Sequence record: BK067790.1
Length of the DNA: 34,343 bases
Strand: one strand, 5' to 3'
Shown: positions 1,577-25,307 of the stretch, in pieces
Position numbering within the stretch: the stretch's first letter is position 1
How the letters are laid out: each line of letters starts with the position of its first letter
The notes under the pieces: model-generated
Told to the model about the DNA's origin: nothing
Seen by the model: only the letters and a program-made list of their open reading frames with translations
Databases searched by the model: none
Translations under genes and position numbers: made by a program

Positions 1577-2596
1577 ATGGGCGTTTTACATGGTAGAGAT
1601 TTACTGTCACCAAAGTGGATAACTGCAATTATTTCTGACGCTTCACACCGAGTACATTTTGTTCCAATCAAACACACTATCGGTGATTACTTTATCACAG
1701 ACATTGACGGTGATGTTTATGCCTTCAAGATTGACGGCAGAAGAATATTACAATACAGAGAATCAATGGTCAAGACATTTAGAATATTACAGTATGACAT
1801 TACACATCACTTGCCGTTAAGTTCCGAGTCAAAGGAACTGGAAATTATTTTAGAGTTAAACAAGCTTCCAAAGGTTGACGGTATGTTGGCAAACATATTC
1901 AAGATACTTGGTTCAAAGGAACGTGACGACTTTGTATCACACAAGTTGTCTGAACTGATTGACAAGATTCAAGGCTATGAGAAAGTTCAAGCACAGACTG
2001 AACTTAACGAAAGATACTCAAAGGAAGCCATGAACATGATTAACTATCTAGACCACTTGGACGTAAGGGAAATCGTTACACCGTTAAAGAAGGTGTCAGA
2101 ATTTATCCAAGAAGACCTTATTGCAACAGATCCAAAGTTCATGGGTACAGTTGTGTCTTCATATCAAAGAACCGACATGGAACACAAGAAGGTAACCAAT
2201 ACCCCTATCGCTTCCAAACAAGCATGGATTAAGTTTGTGGCTATCTTTATGGCAATAGGAATGGTAGGTGCGATAGGTTACATTGTATATGACGGTGGAC
2301 ATTTGGACTCTATGATGGGTATGTCCATGCCAACTCTAGGTCAGGTTAGTGATGATGTTATAATGAAACAGTACCCTGACGCTGAAAGTCTTAGACTCGC
2401 AGTAGATTCAGGCAAAGTTGACTATACCAAACTGTCCTCAGTTGCACAGTCAGTAGTTGACGAGCATAGAGAAAGTTATCCCATAATGTTACAGCCTGAA
2501 GAACCAGTCGTGATTGAAGAACCAGTCGTGATTGAAGAAATGGTACAACCTGACGAGGGTGAGGAACCAGTTCCAATAGTAATAGAACAACCTTAA
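1577..2596 (+). CDS. membrane-anchored hypothetical protein (~339 aa), probable morphogenesis gene
   Basis: ATG 1577 lies 25 nt after TTATATAG (the track uses TTG 1562); one TM segment (WIKFVAIFMAIGMVGAIGYIVY); acidic Pro-rich tail. Confidence 0.85.
   Translation: MGVLHGRDLLSPKWITAIISDASHRVHFVPIKHTIGDYFITDIDGDVYAFKIDGRRILQYRESMVKTFRILQYDITHHLPLSSESKELEIILELNKLPKVDGMLANIFKILGSKERDDFVSHKLSELIDKIQGYEKVQAQTELNERYSKEAMNMINYLDHLDVREIVTPLKKVSEFIQEDLIATDPKFMGTVVSSYQRTDMEHKKVTNTPIASKQAWIKFVAIFMAIGMVGAIGYIVYDGGHLDSMMGMSMPTLGQVSDDVIMKQYPDAESLRLAVDSGKVDYTKLSSVAQSVVDEHRESYPIMLQPEEPVVIEEPVVIEEMVQPDEGEEPVPIVIEQP
2498..2539 (+). repeat. 18-bp in-frame tandem repeat (EEPVVI x2)
   Basis: GAAGAACCAGTCGTGATT at 2498-2515 and 2516-2533, followed by GAAGAA. 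Confidence 0.9.
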
Positions 2597-2614
2597 TACT
2601 AGAATGGCTGATGT

Positions 2615-3040
2615 TTGAATGTGTACTGGTATATAATATTGGCAATACTGGCAGTATCTTTTGTATCTAATGAAGCCTATGCACAGAATACCGTAACTAT
2701 TATTGGTGACGAATCACTTCAGCCATGCTTTATGAATATGACGGCTGGTGCTTCCATGTGGTCTAACTGTGGTGCTGATGAAGATTATTTGGACTTTGCA
2801 CTAATGCCGTTTGAATATATCACTGGTGGTTATTTCTCTATGATACTTGTTACTATCTTTATTATTATGGCTTACATAAAATATCATACCGTACTATATC
2901 CAATGCTTATCGGATTGTTATTCCTTCCAATAAGTTATACTTTCTTCCCAGACACTTTCTTGGTATATGCAATAACATTGTTCGCAGTTGGTGTGGGTGG
3001 AACTTTGACATACCTTCTACTTTGGCGTGGAAGAAACTGA
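2615..3040 (+). CDS. multi-pass membrane protein with signal-like N-terminus, probable virion/assembly protein
   Basis: Hydrophobic N-terminus ending AYA, a Cys pair, then three hydrophobic segments; lies in the structural cluster. Confidence 0.8.
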   Translation: MNVYWYIILAILAVSFVSNEAYAQNTVTIIGDESLQPCFMNMTAGASMWSNCGADEDYLDFALMPFEYITGGYFSMILVTIFIIMAYIKYHTVLYPMLIGLLFLPISYTFFPDTFLVYAITLFAVGVGGTLTYLLLWRGRN

Positions 3041-3068
3041 TAAATAATAATATGCACCAATAAAACAC

Positions 3069-3710
3069 ATGGGGCGTAGTTGTACTAAATGTGATAAAAA
3101 ACATTATGCCAAAGACCTATGTAAAAATCATTATGAAAAAACTGATGAAGCAAAGGCGAAAAGGAATAAAATAAATCAAAGACCTAAAAATAAAACACGA
3201 AAAAATAATTATAATTTAAAATACCATAAAAAAAATAGAGATACTTTATTATTAAAAATGAGAGAAAGGTATCAAAACCTCACACCTGAACAAATAGAAT
3301 CAGAAAGACTTCGTGGTAAACAAAGAACTGCTAATGGTGAATATAGTAACTATCATAAAAACAATAAAGATAAACGTAATGCTGAGTCTAAACAATGGCA
3401 TTTAGATAACCCAACATATCGTTCTGAATGGGCTAAAGCAAATCCGATAAAGCGTTTAAGAATTGAACAAAGATATGATAAAAAACATTCAAAGTTCTAT
3501 AATAAAATACAATTAAAATCATGGGGTGACTTTATCAAATATATCTTTCCAAGATGTATCAACTGTGGTTCAACCAAACAACTTGAATCTCATCACATAT
3601 TACCTAGAGCTCAGTTTCCTGAACTTGCACTTGCACCTGACAACGGTGTAACCCTATGCAAGAAATGTCATAATGAGATAACACAGTTGTTAAAGAAGTT
3701 TTACGCCTAG
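3069..3710 (+). CDS. HNH homing endonuclease
   Basis: C-terminal CINCGSTKQLESHHILP...DNGVTLCKKCHNEI (HNH motif); N-terminal CTKC..KHYAKDLCKNHY motif typical of phage HNH proteins; AT-rich and basic. Confidence 0.9.
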   Translation: MGRSCTKCDKKHYAKDLCKNHYEKTDEAKAKRNKINQRPKNKTRKNNYNLKYHKKNRDTLLLKMRERYQNLTPEQIESERLRGKQRTANGEYSNYHKNNKDKRNAESKQWHLDNPTYRSEWAKANPIKRLRIEQRYDKKHSKFYNKIQLKSWGDFIKYIFPRCINCGSTKQLESHHILPRAQFPELALAPDNGVTLCKKCHNEITQLLKKFYA

Positions 3711-3724
3711 AGTTTACTTTAACA

Positions 3725-3732
3725 TTATATAC
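3725..3732 (+). promoter_or_regulatory. TATA box of the capsid gene (leaderless)
   Basis: TTATATAC ends 25 nt before ATG 3757. Confidence 0.55.
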
Positions 3733-3756
3733 TAGAATTATTTGAGAGTAAGCATA

Positions 3757-4023
3757 ATGGTCGAGAATAACATTATGGCTTTAGTTGGTGCTTTTATAGG
3801 CATTGCCATACTATTAGGAATCGGTACACAAATCTTAGGCAATTCAGTCCAAGACTGTACTAACCTCTCTGATTATGACAGCACAAGTGGTGCAACCCAA
3901 ACAGGTTGGGCAGCCCAATGTGAAGCAAACAATGAACAAACTCAAAATGCATACGCATTATTGATTATTGTATTAATTGTAATTGCAGCAGTCGTAATTT
4001 TGACAGTAGTCAAGATGTTATAA
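3757..4023 (+). CDS. major capsid protein, spindle-shaped virus type (SSV1 VP1/His1-like two-helix hairpin)
   Basis: 88 aa; hydrophobic N-helix (ALVGAFIGIAILLGIGTQILG), polar loop with NLS sequon, hydrophobic C-helix LLIIVLIVIAAVVILTVVKML resembling the fuselloviral VP1 C-terminus; own promoter and a T-rich tract downstream. Confidence 0.8.
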   Translation: MVENNIMALVGAFIGIAILLGIGTQILGNSVQDCTNLSDYDSTSGATQTGWAAQCEANNEQTQNAYALLIIVLIVIAAVVILTVVKML

Positions 4024-4092
4024 GCCTAAAAAACTTATACTCTTTACTTTTTTAAATAACTTTAATAACCACACCCCACACTTTTAGTTAGC

Positions 4093-4362
4093 ATGAGTAG
4101 CCTTATCTTTCTAGGATTTTCGGTTATACTTTTTATAATTTCCTATGGTATCATGTTCACTATTGCACCAATGATACTTGGTTCTGTATTTACTGTCATG
4201 GAAAACAATCTGACTAACGGTTCAATGACACAGGAATGGATTGATATGTATAATCAGACCAAAGAAACTACACAGTATTTGATTCCATTGATTCCAAGTA
4301 TAGGAATATTCATTCTAGTAATCAAAGTCTTAATGGTTGCAAGTGCTAGAGGACGAGACTAA
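4093..4362 (+). CDS. minor capsid/virion membrane protein (two hydrophobic helices)
   Basis: Same hairpin topology as the MCP; NLT/NGS/NQT sequons in the loop; TTTAATAA 25 nt upstream. Confidence 0.7.
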   Translation: MSSLIFLGFSVILFIISYGIMFTIAPMILGSVFTVMENNLTNGSMTQEWIDMYNQTKETTQYLIPLIPSIGIFILVIKVLMVASARGRD

Positions 4363-4363
4363 A

Positions 4364-7300
4364 ATGTCTAAGACATTACTTGTCATACCTGTACTGCTAG
4401 TGTTACTTTTAGTTCCTACAAATGTATTTGCACAAACTGATTTCGGTGTAACAAGCGATCTGACAGTTGAGGGACTTGAATCATTTCCTAATATTGTAAT
4501 GACACCACCACAAGAAATTGAGATAACCACACCGATAACAGGATTAATGACATTACCCGAAGAACGAATCGAATCATTCACTTTTGAGAAATTCCAAGAC
4601 GGTTTCACATGGGAATTAGATGAGGATGGATTTTTGTATCAACAATGGGATGAACTAGGAACAAACCCTGAACCAAAACCTGAATATCCACAAGTCACAG
4701 AAAACTACACCATTGTACAAAATGAAGATGGCACATACACTTTTGCAACACATAGTCCGTATATCTCAGATGGATATGATTGGAAGCCATACATTCTAGG
4801 TGAGGATGAAAACGTAGTTCAGATACAAATTGCTGGTGGAACTATTGTCTTTGACAAAGTATCTGGTGCAGTTACAATATTCAATGAATATGAAACTGTA
4901 ATTGATTCTGACAGTTACAGTGTAAGAACTGCATTGATTGGTTCTGATGTTTGGACTAACCTTAATGTGAACAATACTGATGTTGAAACTACCGTTGTAG
5001 AGGATGGCGACAAAGTAACAGTTTCATTTATTCGTGAAAATGACGAGGGTAAGTTTACAACTGAATATGTAATATACAGTGGAAAGATAAAGACAACTGC
5101 TTACTTTACAAATTATATTTATGAAAATAACAAGTTTGCATTTACACAAACTTTGGACTTGCCTGACAATATAGTTTCTGTAAACAACATGGATGATATT
5201 GATCTAACTGATTATGTTGGAGTATCTTTTGACCGAACAACACTTGAAGAAAATGAGGATTTAATTTTAGAGATAAAGGACATCTACTATAACTCAGGAC
5301 TAGGATTTGATAACCTATGGAGTGTCAATGTTATAACTCCAACTAAAGTGGCACTTGATTATGCCAACGTAGAACAAACACAAACTGTGATAGGCGATAC
5401 AGTAGAATTAGATCCAATATATACTGTAAATCATATAGGTACTATGTCCCCAGCTCAAAGCACTTCATCATACGGTAACTCACAGGGCGATAGTCTAGGA
5501 TGTGGTGGTCGAATTGCTTCGGGTGATCAGGGGTACAACATTACATGGAACTTGAGAAACTATGTAGGTTCTTGGTACACTTGGAACGGATGTAGAACAG
5601 CTATGGTCGGATTTGATTTGGCTGGAATACCTGACACAGCAGTAATATCTGACACCAAATTAGTATATGATATTACATCATCTAGTAATGCTGGAACTTT
5701 TGACCTCAATCAAATGACACAATCAGGACAAGATGGATGGGGTTTGCATAATTATGATACAAGTCAGGCAGTTGGTACAAATCCATACTCAGTTTACGAC
5801 ACAGCAAACTATGATAAAACATGGGAAATGTACTTAGACGCTAACAACTTGGGTACACAGCCTAACGGTGCTGGAAGTAATTACGCTTCCAATTTATCAT
5901 CTGCTGTGGGTACTTATGTAACGGACTTGGGGTCTGCTGGTAATGCAGATGTTCAGGCACAACTAAATGACTCGACTTCTGTTAATGGTGTTGGGGAGTG
6001 GTTTGGAATTGGTATGCCATATTCAGCCATGAAAACTGGTGCAACTGCTTCTAATAACTGGACAAGTCAAACCGTTCAAACTGTTTCCACACAGGACATG
6101 AACTTTGACAATGTAAATTTATTGATAACATTTTCTTCACCACCAACAGAACCAACTAATGTCACTACAACTGCTAACGGTTCAAACGTTGATTTATCTT
6201 GGAGTGCAAGTGAAACTCTTTCAGATTACATAGAATCATCTTCCGCAAAAACATACGTTGTACCCGTAGCACTTCCTGCAACTTGGTCACTTTGGCAGGG
6301 TGGTGCTAGTCCAACAACTCCAACAATGGGTGTGGGTGGCGTACTTGGAACTGCCTTTGACTTTAACGGTTCTACGGATATGGTCGGTGAAAATTTTGTT
6401 ACAAGTGATTTCGCTTCAAACTCACAGGGTTCAATATCAATATGGATAAAACCTGAAGCAAGTGGGTCTAGTGTAGGCAATCCGTTTGGTGGCACAGGAT
6501 TTCAATCATACTGGATAACCAATACCCCATTGTGGTCAGCATATCCATCAAACTCCTTTAACATGGGATCCCTTTATTCTAATGCCAATGCATTTACAAT
6601 GAACGCATGGAATCATGTTGTAGTTACGATTGATTCAACAACGTCAAACAATACAACCGTTGTTTACGTTAATGGTTCGCCAGTTCAAATGTATAATTAT
6701 CCAAGTGGTACGGGTGGTGGTTCTGCAAGTAGTTCCAACTCAAAGACAGCAAGTAACTTGTTGGCAAATACAATACTAGGCGGACAATACCATCCAAGTC
6801 CGCAATTCAAATATCCGTTTGACGGAAAGATAGACGAAGTTTCCTCATGGGATAAAGTGTTATCACAAACTGAGGTTACAACTTTGTATAACTCAGGTAA
6901 TGGTAATACCCCTGACAGTATCAACTCAAACAACAATCTGATTACTTACTTCCCTTTAGATAATACTTCTACACCTCTGCCAAACATGGCAGTAACATCT
7001 GATCCTGTAACTGTAACGTATGATGTAAAGCGTGACGGTACAAGTGTAGGAACCACGACCAATACTTCATTTACAGATACTACTACTGCTTACGGTACAC
7101 CTTATCTTTTTAGTTTGACAGCTTCCACAAGTAATGGAAGTACATCAACAACAAATTTCCCAATTACACTTACAATTCCAGCACCAACTGGATTGACCGC
7201 AACATTGAACATACCTAACGTTGATCTGTCATGGACTGGTGTAAGTAGTGCAACAGGTTACAAGATTGAACATAGTACGGATGGCACAACTTGGAGTACC

Positions 7301-10300
7301 TTAGTTGCAAATACTGGAAATACAAACACAACTTATTCTGATACTGTACCGACACCAAACACAGTAAATTATTATCAGGTCAGGACATTGATAGGTTCTG
7401 CTGAATCAAATGCTATTTATGATTCAACTACAATCACGCCAGTTAATTACAGAACATATACTGCAACTGCAAGTGCAACAACTTGTGATACTGGAACATT
7501 GTATGCTGATGGTACACATGAAACAGGTATGCCAGCTCAAAATGGTGGAAACAGGTATTGTCTTGTAACTTCAATGGAATACGACATATCTGCAATTCCT
7601 GATACTTCAACAATTACAAGTGCAGTTATTGAAGAAACCCATTCTATTTGGACTTCTGGATTTTCCCCATCTTGTGATTACAAATCCAATATGTCACAAC
7701 AGCCATCAACATCAACCACACAACAAAAATGGGATTCTGTAATAGCTGGTACAGTATATGCAAATGATCCAAACTGTATTTCAGGTTATACAAGTGGAAC
7801 TGCGTATGATGTGCCATTAAGTTCACAGGCTATAACAGATATAGAAACGCAGTTATCAGGGGATTGGTTTGGAATTAATTGGGCTATTGATAATTTCCCA
7901 AGCCTTGCCAACGCTGGAACTGGGGGCACACCAGCTAGTGTTACAGGTGGAACATCATTACTAAAATTAGAATATTCCTATATACCACCATCAGCCAATG
8001 CCACAGTTGGTGGCGTACCATCTGCACCAACTGGATTGACAGCAACTTTCAATACAACTACTGCTGACATTGACTTGGCTTTCACAGCACCAGCAAATAA
8101 TAACGGAAGTGCAGTTATTGGTTACAAAGTTGAAGTCTCAACTGACAATGCAACTTGGAGTACGGTCACTGCTGACACTGGAAACACAAACACAACTTAC
8201 ACAGATCTAAATCCTACAATGGGAAGTTTGAATTACTACAAAGTTTCTGCAATTAACGCATACGGAACTGGTGCAGTTTCAAACATAGACAATGACATGG
8301 CTGGGGTTCCACCTGACGCACCGACAATTACCTCAACCTCAACAGACAATCCAAACACAACACCTTTGGAAATTACAGTTAACTGGACAGCACCAACAAA
8401 TACTGGAACGGCTGGAATTACAAACTATGAGGTCTATCGTGACGGTACATTGGTAACGACAGTTGGTAATGTTACAAGTTATACTGATACAGTTCCAACT
8501 GGCGGTGGCACGTTTGTTTATTCATTAAAATCTGTAACACCACATGGAACTTCTGTATTGTCTGCAACTGCTTCACATACTACACCAACAGTACCACCAG
8601 CACCAACTTCAGCACCTACACTTGCAATAGCAAACCCTGACTCAAATCCGTTTGACGTAACATTGTCATGGTCTTTGCCAAGTTCAGGGGGATCGGCAAT
8701 CACATCATTTGAGGTCTTTAGAAGTACAGATGATATAACCTACTCAAGCGTAGGCAATACTTCACAGTTAATCTTCTATGACACTGTACCAAATGTCGGT
8801 ACATTCTATTACAAGTTTTCAAGCATTAACTTGGTAGGCAATTCAGTTCAGTCGCCTTCAAGTAATATCGCAACACCTACCGAACCAGTTGCAGACTCTA
8901 GTGTCACACTGGCAATCAACAGTCCTGATCCAAGTCCTTTGGATATTACAATAAGCATTGTAGCACCAAGTGGTAACGGTGGTTCTGCAATTACTGGATA
9001 TAACTTGCACTCATCAAATGACGATATAACTTACACACAGATCGCTACCAATGTCACAACAGATCAGACAGTGACAGTATCTTCGGCTGGAACTTGGTAC
9101 ATTAAATCACAGGCAATCAATAACGCTGGAACTGCTGGACTTGGAAGTGCAACAAGTATAACCACACCTTCAGTGCCAACTGGTGACGCAAGTGTTACTT
9201 TGGCAATTCCTGACCCTGACAACTTCCCATTTGATTCAACTGCAACTTTTGTAGCACCAAGTGGTAATGGTGGTTCTGCTGTAACTGGTTACAACTTGTA
9301 TTATTCTGATGATGATATAACCTACTCACAGATAGCAACTGCAAGCAACTCTGTTATCAGTCAGACTTTGACTGGTGCTGGAACTCATTACTTTAAAGTT
9401 GAAAGCATAAACAATGTAGGAACTTCAGCACTCAGTTCGGCAATAACCATTGACACACCAACTGTACCTTCATCTGACGCAAGTGCAACATTGGCAATCA
9501 ACAATCCTAACCCAAGTCCTTTGACAATAACTGCGACACTGGTTGCACCTTCATCTGACGGTGGCAGTGCAGTAACAAACTATAACTTGTGGATTTCAAA
9601 TGACGATATAACTTACACTCAAATCGCAACTGCAATCAACGGAACCTTTGATCAGACAGTAAGTCAGTCTGGAACTTATTACTTTAAGGTAGAATCCACT
9701 AACCTAGTTGGCACTGGTGGTCTTGGAAGTGCAACAAGCATAGCCACGCCAACTGTACCAACTGCACCTCAGAACGCAGGCAGTACAATAGCTGACATTG
9801 ACAACGCACCTTATGACGTAACTGTAACATGGGAAACACCTTCATCAACTGGCGGTTCTGACTTGACACAGTATAACGTTTACAGAAAACAAGGCAGTAG
9901 TGCATACTCTTTGTTGACAACAACCACTGGTCTAAGTATAACTGACACGGTTCCGACTTCACTAACAACCAACTTTACTTACAAGATTCATTCAGTAAAC
10001 AATGTTGGCGAGTCAACTGCATTTGACGATACGACTATTACAACATTCAATGTGCCTTCAGCACCAACACTTTCAGTTACAACTGGAACTACCGTACTGT
10101 CTTGGAACGTTCCAAGCAGTGACGCAACTGTAAGCAGTTATAAAATTTACAGGGACAACGTTTTGCTTACAACAGTCGGTACTGTTACAACATACTCTGA
10201 CTTTAGCACAATCGTGTTTGGAAACTCTTATGACTTTAAGATAGTCGCAGTATCATCTTTGGGTGACAGTGCTGATTCAAACACTGTAACTACAACGCCT

Positions 10301-18568: not shown

Positions 18569-18579
18569 TGCTTGTTGGT

Positions 18580-18645
18580 TTAACTTAGCTGACAAGGTGG
18601 TTGGCTACCGATTAGTTAATTAGATGGGGGGAATAACCCCCCCTA
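18580..18645 (+). other. intergenic pair of stem-loops
   Basis: TTAACT...AGTTAA enclosing GGTGG-TTGG-CTACC; then G6-AATAA-C7 hairpin (18626-18643). Confidence 0.4.
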
Positions 18646-18747: not shown

Positions 18748-19067
18748 GAATCAGTAACGGTCATGCAACAAAGTATTTACTTAAACATGGATATAATCAC
18801 ATTTGGCTTAAAGCCCACACAAAGTTTAAAGACAAAGTACAATGTCAAGATACTAGATACTATGCTCTTGACTTATGGAATTTATATGATGGCTTGTGCT
18901 TTGATACCAAAGGCATACTATGGGCTATCCAAATTAAGACAAACGCATGGGCGAAAGCCAGTGACATTATAGAGTTTCAAAAAGACCACAAGATAAAGTG
19001 TATCGTTTTGAACGTAAAGAAAGAAAAGTCAAGATGGTATGTACACGAAAGAAAGTATGCATACTAA
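18744..19067 (+). CDS. PD-(D/E)xK nuclease, Holliday-junction-resolvase (Hjc)-like
   Basis: YLLKHGY...DLWNLYDGLCF...LWAIQIKTN matches the D-x-(F/W)...D...Q-x-K catalytic layout; ATG 18744 via ATGA overlap. Confidence 0.7.
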   Translation: MRISNGHATKYLLKHGYNHIWLKAHTKFKDKVQCQDTRYYALDLWNLYDGLCFDTKGILWAIQIKTNAWAKASDIIEFQKDHKIKCIVLNVKKEKSRWYVHERKYAY

Positions 19068-19234
19068 CCATACCAAAAAACATATATTATTATATATTAT
19101 TATTATAATCCTAGAGGCTAGAACCGTATTATAAGGGACACTCAGTCGGGTCTTATCCCCTCAGTCTAAAAGTACGGCAAGGTATATTGTACCTCATTGA
19201 TTGCCTCACAAACATTTTAATATAGAAAATTATA

Positions 19235-20071
19235 ATGATAGTAATTATGAATGAACGTGATGAAAAAAGAGTAGAAAAGGTATGGGGTAGCATGGTCAGA
19301 TTGGAAACTGCAAAGTACCATGTCGATAATACCGAACCGTCATACCACATACTCTCATTTGGTGGTGGTCGTCAAACAGTGGCACTGTTGTTAAGTATGA
19401 AAAAACTTCTTAGCAATAACAAAAAAGCATGGGTTGTTTTTGCCGATACTGGGGGTGAACACCAAGAAACTTATGATTATATCAACGAGTATATCATACC
19501 GTTTTGTAATATTAATAAAATTCAGTTTGTCAGGGTTCATAACAAATATGGAAAAACCTTGTATGATTACTGCTGGGATAAAAAAATAGTTCCGTCAATA
19601 AAATTTAGGGATTGTACTTCCAAGTTCAAGATAGCACCAATTAGAAAATTCATAAGAGAAGAATTGAATGTTACAAGAAAACACCCATGCTATGTTCATA
19701 TTGGAATATCTTATGACGAGGCAACTAGAATGAACGCCTCTAATGTTTTGTATGCCAAGTCAGTATATCCGTTTGTTGACGGATATAGGGACATTGAGGG
19801 CAAAAAGACAGTTGAGGACTGTGCAAGAATTGTATCTGATGAGGGATTTCCACCAGTTCCTAAATCGGGTTGCTGGTTCTGTCCATTTGCTCAGACATTG
19901 GACTTGTTAGACCCACGTTACAAAGAAAAGACACAGGCATTGGAAGAAAATAATAGCAGATACCCAGAAATTAAACTGAGAGGTATGGGTAAAAACACCA
20001 AATCAGTCAATGAGTTGACAATAAATGACGTAGGAAAAGATTCTTGTAAGTCTGGGTACTGTATGGTATGA
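19235..20071 (+). CDS. PAPS-reductase/DndC-like PP-loop family protein
   Basis: ILSFGGGRQT (PP-loop), FADTGGEH.ETY, CTSKFKIAP, IGIS.DE..R, KSGCWFCPF; start uncertain. Confidence 0.85.
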   Translation: MIVIMNERDEKRVEKVWGSMVRLETAKYHVDNTEPSYHILSFGGGRQTVALLLSMKKLLSNNKKAWVVFADTGGEHQETYDYINEYIIPFCNINKIQFVRVHNKYGKTLYDYCWDKKIVPSIKFRDCTSKFKIAPIRKFIREELNVTRKHPCYVHIGISYDEATRMNASNVLYAKSVYPFVDGYRDIEGKKTVEDCARIVSDEGFPPVPKSGCWFCPFAQTLDLLDPRYKEKTQALEENNSRYPEIKLRGMGKNTKSVNELTINDVGKDSCKSGYCMV

Positions 20072-20163
20072 AGTGTAACTGCCTACCCTGCCAAAACGGC
20101 ACACATCAAGACAGACAATGTATCTATCGTTGCAACTGTACCCATGAGGCACATGAGAAATGA
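20068..20163 (+). CDS. Cys/His-rich micro-protein (31 aa)
   Basis: ATGA coupling at both ends; MKCNCLPCQNGTHQDRQCIYRCNCTHEAHEK*. Confidence 0.6.
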   Translation: MKCNCLPCQNGTHQDRQCIYRCNCTHEAHEK

Positions 20164-20261
20164 GTTGGTTTAACCTATCTGTAAACGCCAAGACCTGTAA
20201 AAGATGTAAGCAAAGAATTATGAATTATCCATGCATTGAATGTGGATTTAGGCATGATTAG
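20160..20261 (+). CDS. Zn-ribbon micro-protein (33 aa)
   Basis: MSWFNLSVNAKTCKRCKQRIMNYPCIECGFRHD*. Confidence 0.65.
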   Translation: MSWFNLSVNAKTCKRCKQRIMNYPCIECGFRHD

Positions 20262-20297
20262 TCACAAAAAATAGAATCTATTTTCAGATAATATCAA

Positions 20298-20324
20298 ACC
20301 CCTAGAGGGCTTCATTCTAGGGGT
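20298..20324. terminator. hairpin after the operon end
   Basis: ACCCCTAGA (20298-20306) / TCTAGGGGT (20316-20324), 9-bp perfect stem. Confidence 0.5.
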
Positions 20325-20466
20325 ACAAGGAATATTAACGCAATCTTAATACTCGAATTTAATTATTATATAACAAATTTAAACCTTGAAAGGTTTGGTT
20401 CGTGACGAATTTAATCTAATCAGCGAACTTGAATTGAATTTCAGTATATTGTATTTAAAATTAAAG

Positions 20467-20616
20467 TAAACTTACTTAGGTGTCCCATGATAATTACGGG
20501 ACACTTTTTCTCTATTAACTTTCTTAGAACTGATTTCCAACAAAGTTAATGATGAAATTGTGTCCCGTAAACTCATTATACTTTAAATAAAACACTGACT
20601 TACTTAGGTAAGTTTA
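20467..20616. repeat. nested inverted and direct repeats (origin- or operator-like)
   Basis: TAAACTTAC/GTAAGTTTA outer IR; TTACGGGACAC (20494-20504)/GTGTCCCGTAA (20560-20570); GTGTCCC at 20480; ACTTACTTAGGT direct repeat at 20470 and 20598. Confidence 0.8.
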
Positions 20617-20642
20617 TTAAATCAATAAAATATAGATAAATA

Positions 20643-20837
20643 TTGAAAGTAGTTAAGAATTATTCACTAAATGTTGAAGTGGTAAAGGCATTTGACGAAG
20701 AAGTTTCAGACCAAACAAGGTCAAGACTTATTGAAGCACTTATGATAAAATTCTTGGTTGAATATACTAGGGGTAATGAGGAAACCCCTAGTATTGACGA
20801 TTCCAGTCTTACCACAGAAAAGGAAGCGATACAATGA
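20643..20837 (+). CDS. ribbon-helix-helix regulator
   Basis: VVKNYSLNVEVVKAFDEEV...RSRLIEALMIKFL: RHH strand-helix-helix pattern; ATGA-coupled to the helicase. Confidence 0.75.
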   Translation: MKVVKNYSLNVEVVKAFDEEVSDQTRSRLIEALMIKFLVEYTRGNEETPSIDDSSLTTEKEAIQ

Positions 20838-22498
20838 CTTTAATCCCAGATGATAAAACTATTACGAATTGTGATTTTTGTCTTAAAGATGATTATGAAA
20901 ACTGTACCAAAGGGGGTCTGTGTCCAGCAAATCCTAACAAGCCACAGTTAAAGAAACTGATTTTATGTGACCATTGTAAAAATGGGGGTGACTGGAAGGC
21001 ACATGAGGAATGTGAGAAAAACTATATCGCCAATGGATTAAAGACATTTTGTCAATGCCCTAGTCTATCTCATGGAAGAAATGCCACGACTTCTATGGAA
21101 CCAGTTTCTTTTATGGACAAGATAAAGTTTGATTCTCAGACTTTGGAAACCGTAAAACATGAGCATAAGGACAGAATTGATATTATTGCAACAAGACTTA
21201 TTGACAAATATAATTTTGTAACTGCTAGAGAAACAGACACTATCTACTACTTTAATGGTAAGATATATGATTCCAAAAACTGTGAGTCAGTAATCAAACA
21301 GGAAACCGAAATACAGATTGTTGAATGTACCAAGTCAGACAAGGCTGAAGTCATTGACAAGATAAAGTCAAGAACCTATGAAAGCCTAGACCATTTTGAC
21401 AAGGACATTGAAAGCCTAGTAGTGCAAAACGGTGTATTGAGTTTACAGACAATGGAATTAAGCCCACATACCCCCCTTAATTTGGCAAAAGTTTTGTTGC
21501 CTTTGAATTACGTCAAGCCTGAGTTTGAAATTGATATAGACGATTTGTTTAATTCCTTAAAGTCAAATCTCAAAGATACTTTGTTTTGGAAATTTTTGGA
21601 AACTTCTTTTACGCATGAGTACAAAGCTGATGAGGAATCAATGCTTTCAGTTTTGGAAATGATGGCTTCGACAATTATTAGAAAACAAATTGACGAAAGA
21701 AGTTTTATTATGCTAGGCAACGGTGCTAACGGAAAGTCAGTATGTCTTGACTATCTTTCTGCCATACTTGGCAGGGACAATGTTTCTCATATTCCGTTAC
21801 AGGTTTTGGCTGAAGATAAATTTGCCAGTGCAAGACTTGACGGAAAACACGCAAATATATTTTCTGACTTGGAAAGAAATGAGCTGTACCATACTGGTAT
21901 CATCAAGGACTTGTCTTCAGGCGAACCAGTTCATGCACAACAAAAAAACAAGAACGGTTTTGACCTGTACCCTTTTGCCACTTTGGTATTTTCATGTAAC
22001 AAGTTTCCCAGAGTCTTTGACCAGTCACAGGGATTTTTCAGACGTTGGATTTTGGTAAAGTGGGAAAGAAATTTTGAGAAAGACCCACAGAAAAATGACA
22101 ACTTGAAAAAGGAACTGCTGGAAAAGACAGAAGAAATGGACTTGGTTTTCTCATGTCTTTGTCATGTTGCAAAGAAACTTTATGACTCAAACAGATTTAC
22201 AAATCCTAAAGACTGGAAGACAGTTCAGAAATTATGGAATGAAAATTCTGACCCTTTGAACTGGTTTGTCGAGAACCATATCATTGATTCAAACGGAAGC
22301 CGTTCAAAGCGTGACACATATCAGTTTTACAAAAAAATAATGTTTGAAAAGGGCGAAGTCCCTTTGGGTATGGGTAAATTTAGCAAGGCATTTTCAGAAT
22401 ACTATGAGGATTCAAAGTCAGATCACGAAAGAATTTGGCTTAACATTGAGTTTAGGGAACCACAACAAACAACGTTAGAGGAAAGTGACAAAACATGA
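20834..22498 (+). CDS. D5-like superfamily 3 replicative helicase with N-terminal Cys/His clusters
   Basis: Walker A GNGANGKS, Walker B ANIFSD, motif B IKDLSSGEPV..QQKNK..F, motif C FSCN, GFFRRW; D5_N-like region; C-terminal wHTH-like FSKAF. Confidence 0.9.
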   Translation: MTLIPDDKTITNCDFCLKDDYENCTKGGLCPANPNKPQLKKLILCDHCKNGGDWKAHEECEKNYIANGLKTFCQCPSLSHGRNATTSMEPVSFMDKIKFDSQTLETVKHEHKDRIDIIATRLIDKYNFVTARETDTIYYFNGKIYDSKNCESVIKQETEIQIVECTKSDKAEVIDKIKSRTYESLDHFDKDIESLVVQNGVLSLQTMELSPHTPLNLAKVLLPLNYVKPEFEIDIDDLFNSLKSNLKDTLFWKFLETSFTHEYKADEESMLSVLEMMASTIIRKQIDERSFIMLGNGANGKSVCLDYLSAILGRDNVSHIPLQVLAEDKFASARLDGKHANIFSDLERNELYHTGIIKDLSSGEPVHAQQKNKNGFDLYPFATLVFSCNKFPRVFDQSQGFFRRWILVKWERNFEKDPQKNDNLKKELLEKTEEMDLVFSCLCHVAKKLYDSNRFTNPKDWKTVQKLWNENSDPLNWFVENHIIDSNGSRSKRDTYQFYKKIMFEKGEVPLGMGKFSKAFSEYYEDSKSDHERIWLNIEFREPQQTTLEESDKT

Positions 22499-22611
22499 GG
22501 TGCAAGTTATGTGGCAAGGTTGTAAAGGTTGTAAACGAATATCATTGTTGGGTTGCGTCACAGCATTGTGGTGCGTGTCACTACTTTGGGGGTAAAAAAA
22601 GTGTCAGGTAG
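22495..22611 (+). CDS. Zn-binding micro-protein (38 aa)
   Basis: ATGA coupling; MRCKLCGKVVKVVNEYHCWVASQHCGACHYFGGKKSVR*. Confidence 0.65.
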   Translation: MRCKLCGKVVKVVNEYHCWVASQHCGACHYFGGKKSVR

Positions 22612-22621
22612 AAATTATGAA

Positions 22622-22774
22622 ATGTATTCGTATTGCAACGGCTGTTCAGAACGAACCATGAAAAAATATCCTAAAGATATGTTGAGGTGTCCAGACTGTA
22701 ATCAGAAACTAAGACATAAACCGAAATCAACTTCAGCAAAAAGACGGGCAAACATGAACTTACCTCGTATTTAA
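22622..22774 (+). CDS. Zn-ribbon protein with basic tail
   Basis: MYSYCNGC...RCPDCNQKLRHKPKS; ATG 22622 preferred over the track start 22553. Confidence 0.7.
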   Translation: MYSYCNGCSERTMKKYPKDMLRCPDCNQKLRHKPKSTSAKRRANMNLPRI

Positions 22775-22780
22775 ATATGG

Positions 22781-22800
22781 GTATAGTTAGGTATAGTTAG
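22781..22800 (+). repeat. 10-bp tandem repeat between TATA and start codon
   Basis: GTATAGTTAG x2, between TTTAAATA (~22771) and ATG 22804. Confidence 0.7.
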
Positions 22801-22803
22801 GGC

Positions 22804-22986
22804 ATGGCTAGACCACGAATAGATTACAATACTCAGTCAATCTGTATGGAATGTAACCAACTTTATCCAAAGGAATTAAAATTGACAATGTGTCCTAATC
22901 CAAACTGTTTCAACTCTCATTTGAGATTCCAGTCAAGAAGTAAGACGGCTAGACATAGACGAGAGGTTGCAAGGTATGAGGTTTAA
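22804..22986 (+). CDS. Zn-ribbon protein with basic tail
   Basis: CMEC...CPNPNC...LRFQSRS; similar to 22622..22774. Confidence 0.7.
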   Translation: MARPRIDYNTQSICMECNQLYPKELKLTMCPNPNCFNSHLRFQSRSKTARHRREVARYEV

Positions 22987-23092
22987 TTGGAAGAAATGCA
23001 AATTATGTGGGGAAATGTTTGATGAAGATGAAAGATATAAACACCAAAGTCAGAAACACTTTTGGTATTTGGGTGATATAACAGATGATTGA
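22976..23092 (+). CDS. C2H2 Zn-finger micro-protein (38 aa)
   Basis: GAGGT SD; MRFNWKKCKLCGEMFDEDERYKHQSQKHFWYLGDITDD*. Confidence 0.65.
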   Translation: MRFNWKKCKLCGEMFDEDERYKHQSQKHFWYLGDITDD

Positions 23093-24104
23093 AATAATAA
23101 TGCTGTTAATGCTTGGCGGTGAAATGGATCTGTCAACTGAACTGGCTGTCAATGTTAAAGAACAAACTGGCAAAGTAGATGAATTACAATTAGAGTATGA
23201 CTCATTACAAGATGGGTTGCTTAAAGTTAAAACTGATATGAATGGTATCTATGCTGATTATATCAAATGGGAAATCAAGTCCAATGTTAATGACGAAAGC
23301 AAAGCCATGAAGGACTATTACCACGATAAAGCACTTGAAGTAAAAAATGAATGGCGTGTGCTAAACAGTGAGATGAAAAAACTTGAAAAGGAATCTGATG
23401 AAGTCATGTTTGACTTGGAAACTGCCAAAGTGTTGCTTGAAAAAATGGAAAAGGATTTGGAAAATCTGTTAAAGGCTAACGAACCCATAGAATCAAGATA
23501 CAAAAATATCAGCATATCACTTTCAAAGAACTGTCAAACCATGATCAACTACGGGTTATACACCAACTGCCCTACCTATGCCGAACTGTTTGAACTGTAT
23601 GACAATACAAACCCTACCGTGTCAGGCACAATGGTTGACACAAAGTATGACATTGAACGTGTTGACACAATGAAAAAGCACTGGAAATTCTATGAACAAT
23701 ATGATAATTTTGAACTTGTAATGGTTCAGCCTGACTCAGACTTTCAGCACAAAAGTGTAAACGTAGAGATACAGGCTGGAAACTTTACGACACTTGCACT
23801 TGTCGGCAACGACAATTCCAGAAACTTTAAGAACGGAAGTTATACCACATGGGAAAACTTTAAGATAAATGATAGTTGTACCAAAATTATTGTCGCACCT
23901 GACATGGAACTGATTGACCAAGCCGTTGAGTTTGCAAAGAATAACTGTGACGGTGACATTGATATTTTAGAAAACACTGTAATCAAACAGGAACCTACAC
24001 CTCATAACGATAGGAACTGGCGTGACTCACCAGCCTTAGTTTATCAGGACTGGTTAAGGAACGCCATTGAAAATAACAAGGGATTGATGTTAGGTCGTGG
24101 TTAA
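23085..24104 (+). CDS. secreted/anchored coiled-coil protein with Cys-containing C-terminal domain
   Basis: Short hydrophobic N-terminus, heptad-rich region, globular C-terminal domain. Confidence 0.8.
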   Translation: MIEIIMLLMLGGEMDLSTELAVNVKEQTGKVDELQLEYDSLQDGLLKVKTDMNGIYADYIKWEIKSNVNDESKAMKDYYHDKALEVKNEWRVLNSEMKKLEKESDEVMFDLETAKVLLEKMEKDLENLLKANEPIESRYKNISISLSKNCQTMINYGLYTNCPTYAELFELYDNTNPTVSGTMVDTKYDIERVDTMKKHWKFYEQYDNFELVMVQPDSDFQHKSVNVEIQAGNFTTLALVGNDNSRNFKNGSYTTWENFKINDSCTKIIVAPDMELIDQAVEFAKNNCDGDIDILENTVIKQEPTPHNDRNWRDSPALVYQDWLRNAIENNKGLMLGRG

Positions 24105-24435
24105 GAAAAAGTATAACGGAAGATATGATAATCTTCCCACATGGAAAAGATTTTTACATAAAAATACTGGATTCATTGTGATGAGTGCAGTTGGAATTTT
24201 AATTCTTACGGCTTGGACAATTAACGAACAAGAGTCTGAATTTTTTCATTCATGGAACTGTGGCAAATTGTTATACTATATGATGAGTGTAGAGGATTAT
24301 GGCTATCCTACTCATAATGATTTGACCGAAGAACAGCATTTGAAACTTCACAAGTTATACGCTGACGATTGCAGTAATGACAAATTCCAAGCACCTGACA
24401 CACTTGAGGTTGATCATGGATTTCAAGAACCTTAA
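24097..24435 (+). CDS. single-TM membrane protein
   Basis: GFIVMSAVGILILTAW segment; Cys pair in the C-terminal part. Confidence 0.75.
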   Translation: MVKKKYNGRYDNLPTWKRFLHKNTGFIVMSAVGILILTAWTINEQESEFFHSWNCGKLLYYMMSVEDYGYPTHNDLTEEQHLKLHKLYADDCSNDKFQAPDTLEVDHGFQEP

Positions 24436-24460
24436 ATACAAGTAATGTTATTTTTTCTAC

Positions 24461-24610
24461 ATGGGAAGATGGGAAGATGATATTAAACCAGCACAGGATT
24501 TAGTTCAGATTAAACGTAACAAATTAAAAAAACTACTGGTCTTATACGGTATCGCTGGTGCTTGTACAGGTATAGCATTTGGAATGTATTTTTCAGGGGG
24601 TATATGCTAA
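24461..24610 (+). CDS. small single-TM protein (49 aa)
   Basis: CTTAAATA about 23 nt upstream; MGRWEDD...KLLVLYGIAGACTGIAFGMYFSGGIC*; TAATG coupling. Confidence 0.65.
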   Translation: MGRWEDDIKPAQDLVQIKRNKLKKLLVLYGIAGACTGIAFGMYFSGGIC

Positions 24611-24729
24611 TGCCTATCGGTGGCTATGGGTACGGTGTAACAAGTGATTACACAGTAAAGTCTGGGAAACGTTGCCCTGCTTGTGGCAAAACAAAATGTA
24701 AACATGGAAAAAAAGCTAGAGTTTTCTAA
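24610..24729 (+). CDS. Zn-binding basic micro-protein (39 aa)
   Basis: MPIGGYGYGVTSDYTVKSGKRCPACGKTKCKHGKKARVF*; TAATG-coupled on both sides. Confidence 0.65.
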   Translation: MPIGGYGYGVTSDYTVKSGKRCPACGKTKCKHGKKARVF

Positions 24730-25307
24730 TGCAAGATAAAGTAAATTATATTTCCCCCGAAACTTTTGAGAGAATTGTTGAGTATGTTCCGATACTTGGT
24801 ATTCGCAAGTGGAAAGATGAGGACATTAAAATGCTCTATAAGACAATGTATTACTGTGCATTACGGGCTAACGAGGCGATTCATTTAAAGAAAGAAAGTT
24901 TCAACTTGGAAGATCGTGAAATTTATCTAGGCAAAACCAAAACAAAGAAACAAGATACTGCACATATTCCTCATATTTTTGTAGATGAACTAAAGACTTG
25001 GCTTATCTTCAAGGAAAAAGGCAGACTGTTTGAAGGGCTGACATATCCAAGACTGTATGTATGGTGCAAAAGAATAGGGTCTGACTTGGATATTTCAGCA
25101 TGGCAAAGTCTTGAAGCCGAAGTTGGTGAAAAGGTTGTGACTCACTTGTTTAGAAAGTCAATCGGCAAGGAAATGTTAAACGGAACTCATGGTGAAAAAG
25201 CCAGTTCGATTCCTGTAATATCAAAACACCTCAGACATTCAAAACCTTCCATGACAGTTGACCATTATCTAAAAGCCAGTCTTGAATCAGTCAAAGAGGC
25301 GTGGTAG
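24729..25307 (+). CDS. tyrosine recombinase (catalytic domain only, 192 aa)
   Basis: YYCALRANEA (R), KTKTK (K), HLFRKS (HxxR), LRHS (H), TVDHY (Y). Confidence 0.92.
   Translation: MQDKVNYISPETFERIVEYVPILGIRKWKDEDIKMLYKTMYYCALRANEAIHLKKESFNLEDREIYLGKTKTKKQDTAHIPHIFVDELKTWLIFKEKGRLFEGLTYPRLYVWCKRIGSDLDISAWQSLEAEVGEKVVTHLFRKSIGKEMLNGTHGEKASSIPVISKHLRHSKPSMTVDHYLKASLESVKEAW

What the first reader, a model, noticed from the sequence alone, without database searches (positions are those of the whole stretch)
1577..25307. Spindle-shaped thaumarchaeal virus with a circular, polymerase-free replication strategy
SEEN: fusiform-type MCP, a large membrane-anchored adhesin, an SF3 helicase, a Tyr recombinase, an Hjc-like nuclease, archaeal TATA-leaderless starts and a Nitrososphaeria-type CPCCG protein. 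No DNA polymerase and no terminal inverted repeats. KNOWN: isolated Nitrosopumilus spindle-shaped viruses (Thaspiviridae) and His1 have linear genomes with protein-primed PolB, while fuselloviruses are circular with integrases. INFERENCE: this is a distinct circular lineage of AOA spindle viruses. Related metagenomic groups may already have been described, so novelty needs checking.
Basis: partly seen in the sequence, partly recalled or inferred. Interest (0 to 1): 0.7.

Follow-up and report, generated by a model that had tools for sequence, protein, structure and literature searches.

The report
Known ammonia-oxidizer spindle virus genome (NMM1)

Summary
[quoted passage not shown] 2024; ICTV 2025).

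- an 88-aa two-helix hairpin MCP candidate;
- a 2,301-aa fn3-rich adhesin with a signal peptide and C-terminal membrane anchors;
- a D5-like SF3 helicase with no primase domain;
- a 192-aa tyrosine recombinase with an intact catalytic hexad;
- a PD-(D/E)xK-fold nuclease, for which Hjc is only one of several matches;
- TATA-like boxes about 30 nt upstream of operon-leading genes;
- no DNA polymerase and no terminal inverted repeats.

The CPCCG protein lies outside the stated coordinates.

Circularity is supported. The source contig carries a 127-bp direct terminal repeat.

My fold and profile searches could not tie the MCP specifically to SSV1 or His1 capsid proteins. Morphology, host and integration remain predictions.

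The best new lead is a pair of small integrated elements in a Nitrosopelagicus single-cell genome that carry this virus family's MCP gene.

The parts
1..34343 (.). [quoted passage not shown] The map closes into a circle.
   Evidence: The window is byte-identical to BK067790.1. The contig's last 127 nt equal window 1-127.
33516..34343 (+). 5' part (residues 1-276) of the core P-loop/AAA-type ATPase. Walker A GSMHSGKS starts at nt 33687 and Walker B ILIFDD at nt 33840. The gene continues at window 1-240.
   Evidence: An open frame spans the junction. The joined 355-aa protein is intact and 89-95% identical in four relatives, and is present in all 11 family records and no other record. GenBank lists it as partial ORF56.
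1..240 (+). 3' part (residues 277-355) of the same ATPase gene, annotated in GenBank as partial ORF1.
32923..33516 (+). ORF55, a 197-aa Cys-containing (zinc-binding) core protein immediately upstream of the ATPase.
   Evidence: It is 30-95% identical in all 8 compared family members. Ni et al. list it as a core gene.
32212..32783 (.). A 572-bp AT-rich divergent intergenic region, the candidate replication origin and/or promoter-operator hub. Iterons GACTGGAAATATAGGTG lie at 32671-32687 and 32716-32732, with an inverted copy at 32262-32278.
   Evidence: There are 3 matches, and 0 of 100 shuffles reach 3. Repeats are mapped. The same arrangement occurs in NMP1, and an AT-rich gap sits at the same position in four relatives. 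Function is inferred.
799..1272 (-). ORF4, a 157-aa family core protein of unknown function.
   Evidence: 30-97% identical in all 8 compared members.
1577..2596 (+). ORF5, a 339-aa core protein with one TM-like segment (residues 215-240). A TATA-like box starts about 30 nt upstream of the start codon.
2621..3040 (+). ORF6, a 139-aa core membrane protein with three TM-like segments.
3069..3710 (+). ORF7, an HNH endonuclease. It is probably a mobile insertion between ORF6 and the MCP gene.
   Evidence: Pfam HNH at 1.9e-9 and PHROG HNH families. Among the 8 relatives compared, a full-length homologue occurs only in NMJ1 (92%/100%); NYM1 gives only a 20%-coverage match.
3757..4023 (+). ORF8, the putative major capsid protein. 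It is an 88-aa hydrophobic alpha-helical hairpin with two invariant Cys and an NxS/T sequon in a length-variable loop.
4093..4362 (+). ORF9, a second 89-aa two-TM core protein. It has no detectable similarity to ORF8.
4364..11269 (+). ORF10, a 2,301-aa adhesin-like protein and probable terminal fibre or host-recognition protein. It has a signal-like N-terminus, Laminin_G_3, F5/8C and many fn3 repeats, and three C-terminal TM-like segments. It is the most variable structural gene.
   Evidence: Pfam. 291-nt tandem repeats at 8958-9630. TM-like segments and 32 sequons. Only 26-63% identity over partial length, while neighbouring genes are 83-99% identical.
11269..11823 (+). ORF11, a 184-aa membrane protein (three TM-like segments) of the structural module.
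11879..12241 (-). ORF12, a 120-aa core membrane protein with three TM-like segments.
12309..17018 (+). ORF13, a 1,569-aa basic protein (pI 9.8, 18% K+R) with no Cys and no TM segment. It matches no known family, and its role is unknown; an internal or DNA-associated virion protein is a guess.
17967..18245 (+). A 92-aa two-TM ORF that is not annotated in BK067790.1 but is conserved in relatives.
   Evidence: 88-97% identical in NMP1, NMH1, NMJ1 and NMC1. Absent from the feature table.
18744..19067 (+). ORF18, a small PD-(D/E)xK-fold nuclease with invariant D43, D49, Q63 and K65.
   Evidence: Alignment A2. AF2 pLDDT 85 and pTM 0.78. The Foldseek top hits are all restriction-endonuclease-fold nucleases, including Hjc 2eo0.
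19247..20071 (+). ORF19, a PAPS-reductase-family protein. It is an accessory gene shared only with NMP1.
   Evidence: Pfam 5.7e-6. PHROG 424 at 2.9e-27. Distribution.
20834..22498 (+). ORF21, a D5-like SF3 helicase. It has a Cys-rich N-terminus (residues 1-110), a D5_N domain and the helicase core, but no recognisable primase domain.
   Evidence: Pfam. PDB 7ola helicase part at 2.8e-15. PHROG 'DNA primase' families align only from profile position about 170 onward (most from about 200-490). Motifs.
24729..25307 (+). ORF28, a 192-aa tyrosine recombinase consisting of the catalytic domain only, with an intact R-K-H-R-H-Y hexad.
25514..32211 (-). Leftward operon of about 25 small genes. These are mosaic accessory or early genes, with start-stop overlaps and a TGAGGRC(TTGAA) motif 9-15 nt upstream of 12 start codons.
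28103..28309 (-).

Best explanation
The window is the complete genome of Nitrosopumilaceae spindle-shaped virus NMM1 (Marefusivirus montereyense, Nipumfusiviridae). NMM1 is an uncultured dsDNA virus assembled from a Monterey Bay ammonia-oxidizing archaeal community.

Shown:
- The map closes on itself. The source contig has a 127-bp terminal repeat, and one ATPase gene runs across the ends.
- The genome encodes no DNA polymerase.
- Gene layout. A rightward module encodes the hallmark Zn-protein and ATPase. It is followed by membrane and structural genes: the two-helix MCP candidate, a second two-TM protein, a giant fn3 adhesin and a 1,569-aa basic protein. Then comes a DNA-handling set: a PD-(D/E)xK nuclease, a PAPS-reductase-like protein, a primase-less D5-type SF3 helicase and a catalytic-domain-only tyrosine recombinase. 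A leftward operon holds about 25 small, mosaic genes.
- Expression signals follow the archaeal pattern. TATA-like boxes start about 30 nt upstream of the start codons of operon-leading genes (leaderless or nearly so), and SD-like motifs precede internal genes.

Inferred:
- The circular genome is copied by the host replisome (primase and polymerases). The viral SF3 helicase loads or assists it at the AT-rich, iteron-flanked 572-bp region between the two divergent transcription units.
- The nuclease and the recombinase process junctions and multimers, and the recombinase may also integrate the genome.
- The hydrophobic hairpin MCP builds a lemon-shaped shell as in fuselloviruses.
- The hypervariable adhesin sits at the virion tip and determines host range.
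For: Identity:
- The window equals BK067790.1.
- The same contig appears in Ni et al. File S1, Table S1 and Table S2.
- It appears in the ICTV species table.

Circularity:
- The source contig has a 127-bp DTR.
- The junction-spanning ATPase ORF has the same length as NMH1's intact copy and is intact in four relatives.
- Relatives are collinear but cut at different points. NMJ1 is cut inside the adhesin gene.
- Four other Marefusivirus contigs are 48-123 bp, or 27.6 kb, longer than their trimmed records.

No polymerase: Pfam was run on all ORFs, and the paper says the same for the family.

Gene functions.

Expression signals.

Candidate origin.

Host link:
- The sample is an AOA community.
- Best outside hits are Nitrosopumilaceae proteins.
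- An MCP homologue is physically embedded in a Nitrosopelagicus single-cell genome contig among housekeeping genes.
Against: - No particle has been seen, and the MCP call rests on a low-information alpha-hairpin. My Foldseek searches gave only generic hairpins (best E>2). The PDB profile search and hhalign against His1 VP21 and SSV1 VP3 were non-significant.
- A terminal repeat in an assembly cannot separate a true circle from a terminally redundant or permuted linear genome.
- The origin, the helicase's role and the recombinase's role are untested.
- No full-length integrated copy was found in 185,579 species-representative genomes with the MCP patterns used. The integrase-homologue contigs I examined are free virus-like contigs.
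- The SF3 helicase is not a family-wide gene. It is absent or very divergent in 5 of 8 relatives, so the replication module is exchangeable.
Confidence: 0.8

Rival explanations
1. The packaged genome is linear and terminally redundant or circularly permuted. Replication would proceed through concatemers, and the 127-bp overlap would reflect that redundancy rather than a covalently closed circle.
For: A direct terminal repeat in a de novo assembly is produced equally by circles, concatemers and permuted linear genomes. The NMJ1 contig is about 1.8 genome lengths, which looks concatemer-like.
Against: No terminase or other headful-packaging gene is detectable. The repeats of 48-127 bp are in the size range that overlap in assembly of a closed circular or repeated sequence can produce (my own knowledge, not tested here). 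The extra NMJ1 length enters a divergent adhesin allele, which suggests a two-strain assembly rather than a true concatemer. Spindle viruses without PolB (fuselloviruses) are circular, per the SSV1 record.
Confidence: 0.12
2. The element is not a spindle-shaped virus. ORF8 would be an ordinary small two-TM membrane protein, and the replicon would be a virus of another morphology (for example pleomorphic or enveloped) or a plasmid-like element with surface proteins.
For: There is no significant structural or profile match of ORF8 to solved or predicted fusiform MCPs. No Pfam or PHROG family matches it. No particle has been imaged, and the paper calls the morphology hypothetical.
Confidence: 0.15
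3. The 192-aa tyrosine recombinase is a Xer-like multimer resolvase for the circular replicon and not an integrase. On this view the virus does not lysogenise.
For: The protein has only the catalytic domain, at 188-204 aa in 8 orthologues. No full provirus was found in GTDB representative genomes. Homologues sit on virus-sized free contigs. No tRNA or tRNA-like attP was detected.
Against: The genome scan used only two MCP peptide patterns and one genome per species. PHROG and Pfam place the protein with phage integrases. AOA genomes do carry integrated elements with tyrosine integrases next to an MCP homologue, although that integrase is a different 440-aa protein.
Confidence: 0.4

Closest known systems
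Nipumfusiviridae, genus Marefusivirus (NMP1, NMH1, NMJ1, NMC1; Ni et al. 2024; ICTV 2025)
   Same: The window is the exemplar genome of M. montereyense. It is collinear with the other four species, and 27-38 of its 51 proteins are shared at 75-85% mean identity. All hallmark genes are present.
   Different: Nothing at the level of identity. My additions to the public record are these: the ATPase gene is split by the linearisation (GenBank lists two partial CDS and calls the record 'linear'); a conserved 92-aa ORF is unannotated; and functional calls are given for ORF18, ORF19, ORF21 and ORF28, which GenBank names only 'ORFn'.
Thaspiviridae (Nitrosopumilus spindle-shaped viruses NSV1-3) and Halspiviridae (His1)
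   Same: They share a predicted spindle morphology built from a small two-helix hydrophobic MCP. Thaspiviridae share the same host family. Genome sizes are comparable to NSV (27-29 kb per Ni et al.).
   Different: Those viruses have linear genomes with terminal inverted repeats and a protein-primed family-B polymerase (His1 record). Here there is no PolB, there are no TIRs, and the map closes into a circle. There is no sequence-level MCP similarity to His1 VP21.
Fuselloviridae (SSV1)
   Same: Both have a circular dsDNA genome without a polymerase, a tyrosine recombinase, an AAA-type ATPase, a hydrophobic hairpin MCP with loop sequons, and leaderless TATA promoters (SSV1 record; VP1/VP3 sequences).
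   Different: The genome is twice the size and the host is mesophilic. The recombinase is a 192-aa catalytic domain, not the 335-aa SSV-type integrase with attP inside its gene. The replication helicase is D5-type SF3. There is no significant MCP profile match. The tip protein is a giant fn3 adhesin, and Ni et al. found no similarity to SSV19 tail proteins.
D5-like / P4-type primase-helicases of phages, plasmids and satellites (e.g. SaPI5 Rep 7ola, ASFV C962R)
   Same: ORF21 shares the D5_N plus SF3 helicase core.
   Different: ORF21 lacks the N-terminal primase domain of those proteins and has a Cys-rich N-terminus of about 110 aa instead.

Membership tests
Nipumfusiviridae (ICTV 2024.003A; Ni et al. 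2024) | Shares the family major capsid protein | tested here: met
   ORF8 is 46-98% identical over its full length to the MCP of all 8 compared members. At E<=10 it matches only family records in the phage collection.
Nipumfusiviridae (ICTV 2024.003A; Ni et al. 2024) | Shares the family ATPase | tested here: met
   The joined 355-aa ATPase is 33-95% identical in all 11 family records and matches no other record.
Nipumfusiviridae (ICTV 2024.003A; Ni et al. 2024) | Zn-binding protein plus three conserved proteins of unknown function (core set of Ni et al.) | tested here: met
   ORF55 (30-95%), ORF4 (30-97%), ORF5 (33-91%) and ORF6 (41-85%) are found in all 8 compared genomes. ORF9 and ORF12 are also universal.
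Nipumfusiviridae (ICTV 2024.003A; Ni et al. 2024) | [quoted passage not shown] | tested here: met
   Mean identity of shared proteins is 75-85% to the four Marefusivirus genomes and 39-44% to the other genera. This is an approximate tblastn-based measure.
Nipumfusiviridae (ICTV 2024.003A; Ni et al. 2024) | Is the listed exemplar sequence | tested here: met
   The window equals BK067790.1 byte for byte. BK067790 is listed as Marefusivirus montereyense NMM1.
Nipumfusiviridae (ICTV 2024.003A; Ni et al. 2024) | Spindle-shaped virion; ammonia-oxidizing archaeal host | not testable with these tools
   Both are predictions in the literature. Supporting context here comes from the AOA-community sample and an MCP homologue inside a Nitrosopelagicus SAG chromosome contig.
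Thaspiviridae / Halspiviridae | Protein-primed family-B DNA polymerase | tested here: not met
   No DNA_pol_B or any other polymerase domain occurs in any ORF.
Thaspiviridae / Halspiviridae | Linear genome with terminal inverted repeats | tested here: not met
   There are no inverted repeats at the ends. Instead there is a 127-bp direct overlap and a gene that spans the junction.
Fuselloviridae | VP1/VP3-family MCP detectable by sequence or profile | tested here: inconclusive
   hhalign of A1 against SSV1 VP3 gives probability <1%. Helix 2 shows a 43% identical 28-column stretch that is not significant. The profile had Neff of only 1.6. Ni et al. report HHpred 75% for the NYM1 orthologue.
Fuselloviridae | SSV-type integrase (about 335 aa, attP within the gene) | tested here: not met
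   ORF28 is a 192-aa catalytic domain only. SSV1 D-335 carries the integration site inside the gene. No att site was identified here.
Archaeal Holliday-junction resolvase Hjc | Hjc-specific sequence family and catalytic E-D-E-K set | tested here: inconclusive
   No Pfam or PDB sequence hit was found. The fold is PD-(D/E)xK, and Hjc 2eo0 aligns over only about 60 residues (E 0.03), ranking below the SPARDA nuclease, DinG and splicing-endonuclease hits. The motif is D..D..QxK rather than E..D..ExK.

The most novel reading that the evidence does not exclude
The most novel lead is outside the window. A single-cell genome of Ca. Nitrosopelagicus (AH-558-E02) carries two diverged copies (72-75% nt identity) of a roughly 3-4 kb integrated element. 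Its only link to nipumfusiviruses is a 70-72% identical MCP gene. Beside that gene sit a Zn-finger ORF, a 368-382-aa orphan protein (possibly a replication protein), a 117-119-aa ORF and, in one copy, a 440-aa tyrosine integrase.

These could be capsid-gene-carrying satellite or minimal elements that exploit nipumfusivirus virions. If so, they would also be the first physical host link for the family. Within the window itself, the unexcluded novel reading is a host-replisome-dependent circular replicon driven by a primase-less SF3 helicase at an iteron-flanked origin.
Probability: 0.25. Interest if true: 0.55.

Novelty: already known. Interest (0 to 1): 0.15.

Why it matters
Viruses of ammonia-oxidizing archaea affect a key step of the marine nitrogen cycle, and few are known. 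This lineage has already been published and classified, so the finding adds no new entity.

What could still matter:
- A corrected annotation of the reference record. The map is circular, the ATPase is a single gene, one conserved ORF is missing, and the helicase, recombinase, nuclease and PAPS-reductase genes can be given functional names.
- A testable replication model. It comprises host polymerases, a primase-less SF3 helicase and an iteron-flanked AT-rich origin, and the comparison suggests that replication modules are swapped between genera.
- A physical single-cell link between the family's MCP gene and a Nitrosopelagicus chromosome, through small integrated elements that deserve their own study.

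Tried and rejected
- Foldseek of the ORF8 model against PDB and BFVD returned only generic alpha-hairpins (best E>2), so it is not informative for this fold.
- The PDB profile search with A1 found no capsid-protein match beyond chance.
- hhalign of A1 against His1 VP21 and SSV1 VP3 gave probability <1%.
- PHROGs gave nothing for the ten structural-region and orphan proteins scanned, or for the ATPase, ORF4, ORF55, ORF43 and ORF50.
- ORF8 and ORF9 are not detectable paralogues.
- The NSV1 accession I recalled (MK570053) is not in the collection, so no direct NSV comparison was possible.
- PDB sequence searches found nothing for ORF18, the integrase or the ATPase.
- No tRNA and no Rfam family was found in the window, so there is no tRNA-type attP clue.
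- The search for integrated full-length proviruses had two parts. The genome-contig scan with the MCP profile found only the Nitrosopelagicus mini-elements. The two longest contigs carrying integrase homologues are free virus-like contigs without host genes.
- I considered GC skew as origin evidence and rejected it. The turning points at about 25 kb and 32-33 kb coincide with the switches in gene strand, so skew cannot be separated from coding-strand bias.
- I considered the 61.6-kb NMJ1 contig as a provirus in host DNA and rejected that. The sequence beyond the record start continues the adhesin gene with a divergent allele.

Full report
**Identity**

A protein-guided scan of IMG/VR with the helicase placed the window on IMGVR_UViG_3300032073_000103, a 34,470-bp contig, starting at contig base 1. 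A tblastn against GenBank phage and archaeal-virus records found a 34,343-bp record, BK067790.1, 'Nitrosopumilaceae spindle-shaped virus isolate NMM1'. The window is byte-identical to that record.

This contig is one of the ten IMG/VR relatives of NYMAG-47 described by Ni et al. 2024 (PMC10866085). [quoted passage not shown] ICTV ratified the family Nipumfusiviridae in 2025, and BK067790 is the exemplar of Marefusivirus montereyense (PMC12451623).

**Checking the observation**

- **MCP candidate.** ORF8 (3757-4023) is 88 aa with two hydrophobic helices. Its loop carries two invariant cysteines, an NxS/T sequon and length variation. AlphaFold2 on a 32-sequence alignment gives an alpha-hairpin with pLDDT 80 and helices at residues 2-30 and 50-87.
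- **Adhesin.** ORF10 (4364-11269, 2,301 aa) has Laminin_G_3, F5/8C and many fn3 domains. It has a signal-like N-terminus, three C-terminal TM-like segments and 32 sequons.
- **Helicase.** ORF21 (20834-22498) is a D5-like SF3 helicase. It carries D5_N and DUF5906 and matches PHROG 864 at 1e-62 and the helicase part of PDB 7ola at 2.8e-15. Walker A and motif C are present. Its first 110 residues or so are Cys-rich. The phage 'primase' profiles align only from about position 170 onward (most from about 200-490), so no primase domain is present.
- **Recombinase.** ORF28 (24729-25307) is a 192-aa tyrosine recombinase. R46, K71, H139, R142, H170 and Y180 are invariant in eight orthologues from three genera.
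- **Nuclease.** ORF18 (18744-19067) gave no sequence hits. Its AF2 model (pLDDT 85, pTM 0.78) matches only PD-(D/E)xK nucleases. These include the SPARDA nuclease domain, tRNA-splicing endonucleases, Hjc ST1444, HincII and lambda exonuclease, all at weak E-values. 'Nuclease of the restriction-endonuclease fold' is justified; 'Hjc-like' is only one possibility.
- **No polymerase.** Pfam scans of every ORF found no DNA polymerase.
- **No terminal inverted repeats**.
- **Expression signals.** TATA-like hexamers start 29-32 nt upstream of the start codon in 7 of 16 genes that follow a gap of at least 45 nt, against 6 of 40 internal genes (p=0.035). SD-like G-rich motifs precede 26 of 40 internal genes but only 3 of 16 leading genes (p=0.003). 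This is the usual archaeal pattern of leaderless first genes and SD-dependent internal genes. The statistics are modest.

The source contig ends with 127 nt identical to window 1-127, so the window is the contig with its direct terminal repeat trimmed. Joining the ends creates one 355-aa open reading frame with Walker A (GSMHSGKS) and Walker B (ILIFDD) motifs.

This is the family's hallmark ATPase. It is intact and 89-95% identical in NMH1, NMP1, NMJ1 and NMC1. It is present in all 11 family records and in nothing else among 50,697 records. GenBank lists it as two partial CDS (ORF1 and ORF56) in a record typed 'linear'.

The relatives are collinear but cut at different points; NMJ1 is cut inside the adhesin gene. 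Their IMG/VR contigs exceed the trimmed records by 48-123 bp. Together this supports a circular map. An assembly overlap cannot exclude a terminally redundant linear form.

**Comparative picture**

- The universal genes are the ATPase, ORF55, ORF4, ORF5, ORF6, the MCP, ORF9 (a second two-TM protein, not a detectable paralogue of the MCP), ORF12 and part of the adhesin.
- The short recombinase is present in 7 of 8 compared genomes.
- The SF3 helicase is 83-93% identical in three Marefusivirus genomes, only 22-26% in three others, and undetected in NTM1 and NYM1. The replication module is therefore exchangeable within the family.
- A full-length HNH homologue occurs only in NMJ1 (NYM1 gives only a short 20%-coverage match), and PAPS reductase is shared only with NMP1. 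Both look like accessory or mobile genes.
- The leftward block (25514-32211) is highly mosaic.
- The adhesin, ORF11 and ORF13 diverge far more than their neighbours. The 61.6-kb NMJ1 contig runs past the record start into a different adhesin allele. This fits strain-level diversification of a host-recognition protein.

**Mechanism**

Shown: a closed map, no polymerase, the gene functions listed above and archaeal expression signals.

Inferred:
- Replication is carried out by host primase and polymerases. The SF3 helicase acts at the 572-bp AT-rich region (32212-32783) between the divergent transcription units.
- That region carries two exact GACTGGAAATATAGGTG copies and an inverted copy; 0 of 100 shuffles reach three matches. 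The same arrangement occurs in NMP1, and an AT-rich gap sits at the same position in four relatives. It could equally be a promoter-operator hub.
- The nuclease and the recombinase would resolve replication or recombination intermediates.

Whether the recombinase also integrates the genome is open. No full provirus turned up, and the homologue-bearing contigs I examined are free virus-like contigs. GC skew turns at the gene-strand switches and is not independent evidence.

**MCP and morphology**

My fold searches and profile comparisons did not connect ORF8 specifically to fusiform capsid proteins. Alpha-hairpins carry little signal for these methods.

The case rests on four points:
- its architecture, which mirrors SSV1 VP1/VP3;
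- its conservation and fixed position next to the adhesin;
- the absence of any other capsid candidate;

No particle has been imaged.

**Host**

The sample is an AOA community, and the best outside hits are Nitrosopumilaceae proteins. In addition, an MCP homologue (72% identity) lies on a 76.5-kb contig of the Ca. Nitrosopelagicus single-cell genome AH-558-E02. There it sits between FEN1 and Usp/Cys-tRNA synthetase, inside an island of about 4 kb with a 440-aa integrase. A second, 72-75% identical copy lies on another contig of the same cell, next to an ABC permease.

These mini-elements share only the MCP with nipumfusiviruses, and their other proteins match no known family. The closest MCPs sit in standard nipumfusivirus synteny on Tara contigs.

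**Verdict**

Its biological reading agrees with the literature, but the entity is already described, deposited and classified. Interest as a discovery is low. The useful residue is annotation corrections, a testable replication model and the MCP-bearing mini-elements.

Noticed in passing
window 33516-34343 + 1-240: One 355-aa P-loop ATPase gene, the family hallmark, is split by the linearisation point. GenBank BK067790.1 lists it as two partial CDS (ORF56 and ORF1) and types the record as linear.
   Followed up: yes
L009 4316-8461 and L015 203-2723 (Ca. Nitrosopelagicus SAG AH-558-E02, contigs JAOMCQ010000004 and JAOMCQ010000023): Two diverged copies (72-75% nt identity) of a small integrated element. 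Each has a Zn-finger ORF, a 368-382-aa orphan protein, a 117-119-aa ORF and a nipumfusivirus-type MCP gene (70-72% identity). One copy also has a 440-aa tyrosine integrase. Both are embedded among host housekeeping genes, and only the MCP is shared with the viruses. They may be satellite-like or minimal elements. They also give a physical host link.
   Followed up: partly
window 25770-30877, minus strand: A conserved TGAGGRC(TTGAA) motif lies 9-15 nt upstream of the start codons of 12 small genes whose starts overlap the preceding stops. As a result, several upstream proteins end in similar peptides (EGLEQ, EDLEK, GDLNQ). It is probably an SD and translational-coupling signal, but it is longer than a plain SD.
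   Followed up: partly
window 32212-32783: AT-rich (31% GC) divergent intergenic region with two exact 17-nt iterons (32671, 32716), related ACTGGAGTGGAAA copies (32754, 32799) and an inverted copy (32262-32278). The same layout occurs in NMP1. It is a candidate origin or operator region.
   Followed up: partly
window 20072-20642: A 571-bp non-coding gap upstream of ORF20 and the helicase contains a 36-nt imperfect hairpin (arms 20494-20529 and 20535-20570, 81% complementary, 5-nt loop) and a 12-nt exact direct repeat (20470, 20598). It is a second candidate cis element.
   Followed up: no
window 17967-18245 (+): A 92-aa two-TM ORF is missing from the BK067790.1 annotation. It is 88-97% identical in NMP1, NMH1, NMJ1 and NMC1, and NMP1 annotates it as ORF15.
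   Followed up: yes
window 4364-11269; L008 19811-20588: The adhesin is by far the most divergent structural gene, at 26-63% identity over partial length. It contains 291-nt tandem fn3-coding repeats (8958-9630). The 61.6-kb IMG/VR contig of NMJ1 runs beyond the genome into a different adhesin allele, which suggests co-occurring strains that differ in this gene.
   Followed up: partly
window 3069-3710 and 19247-20071: Among the 8 relatives, a full-length HNH endonuclease homologue is present only in NMJ1 (NYM1 gives a 20%-coverage match), and the PAPS-reductase-like gene only in NMP1. Both are patchy accessory genes. The HNH gene sits exactly between ORF6 and the MCP gene, like a homing insertion.
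   Followed up: partly
window 1353-1412: Two 27-nt direct repeats (ATAGGGAATACTCTAAAAAGTATAGGG, 89% identical, spacing 33) lie in the divergent ORF4/ORF5 promoter region.
   Followed up: no
L019 (NMC1) 535-2925: NMC1 has a 796-aa protein where the window has its 554-aa helicase. It is only 25% identical over 68% of the query, which indicates replacement of the replication module within the genus.
   Followed up: no
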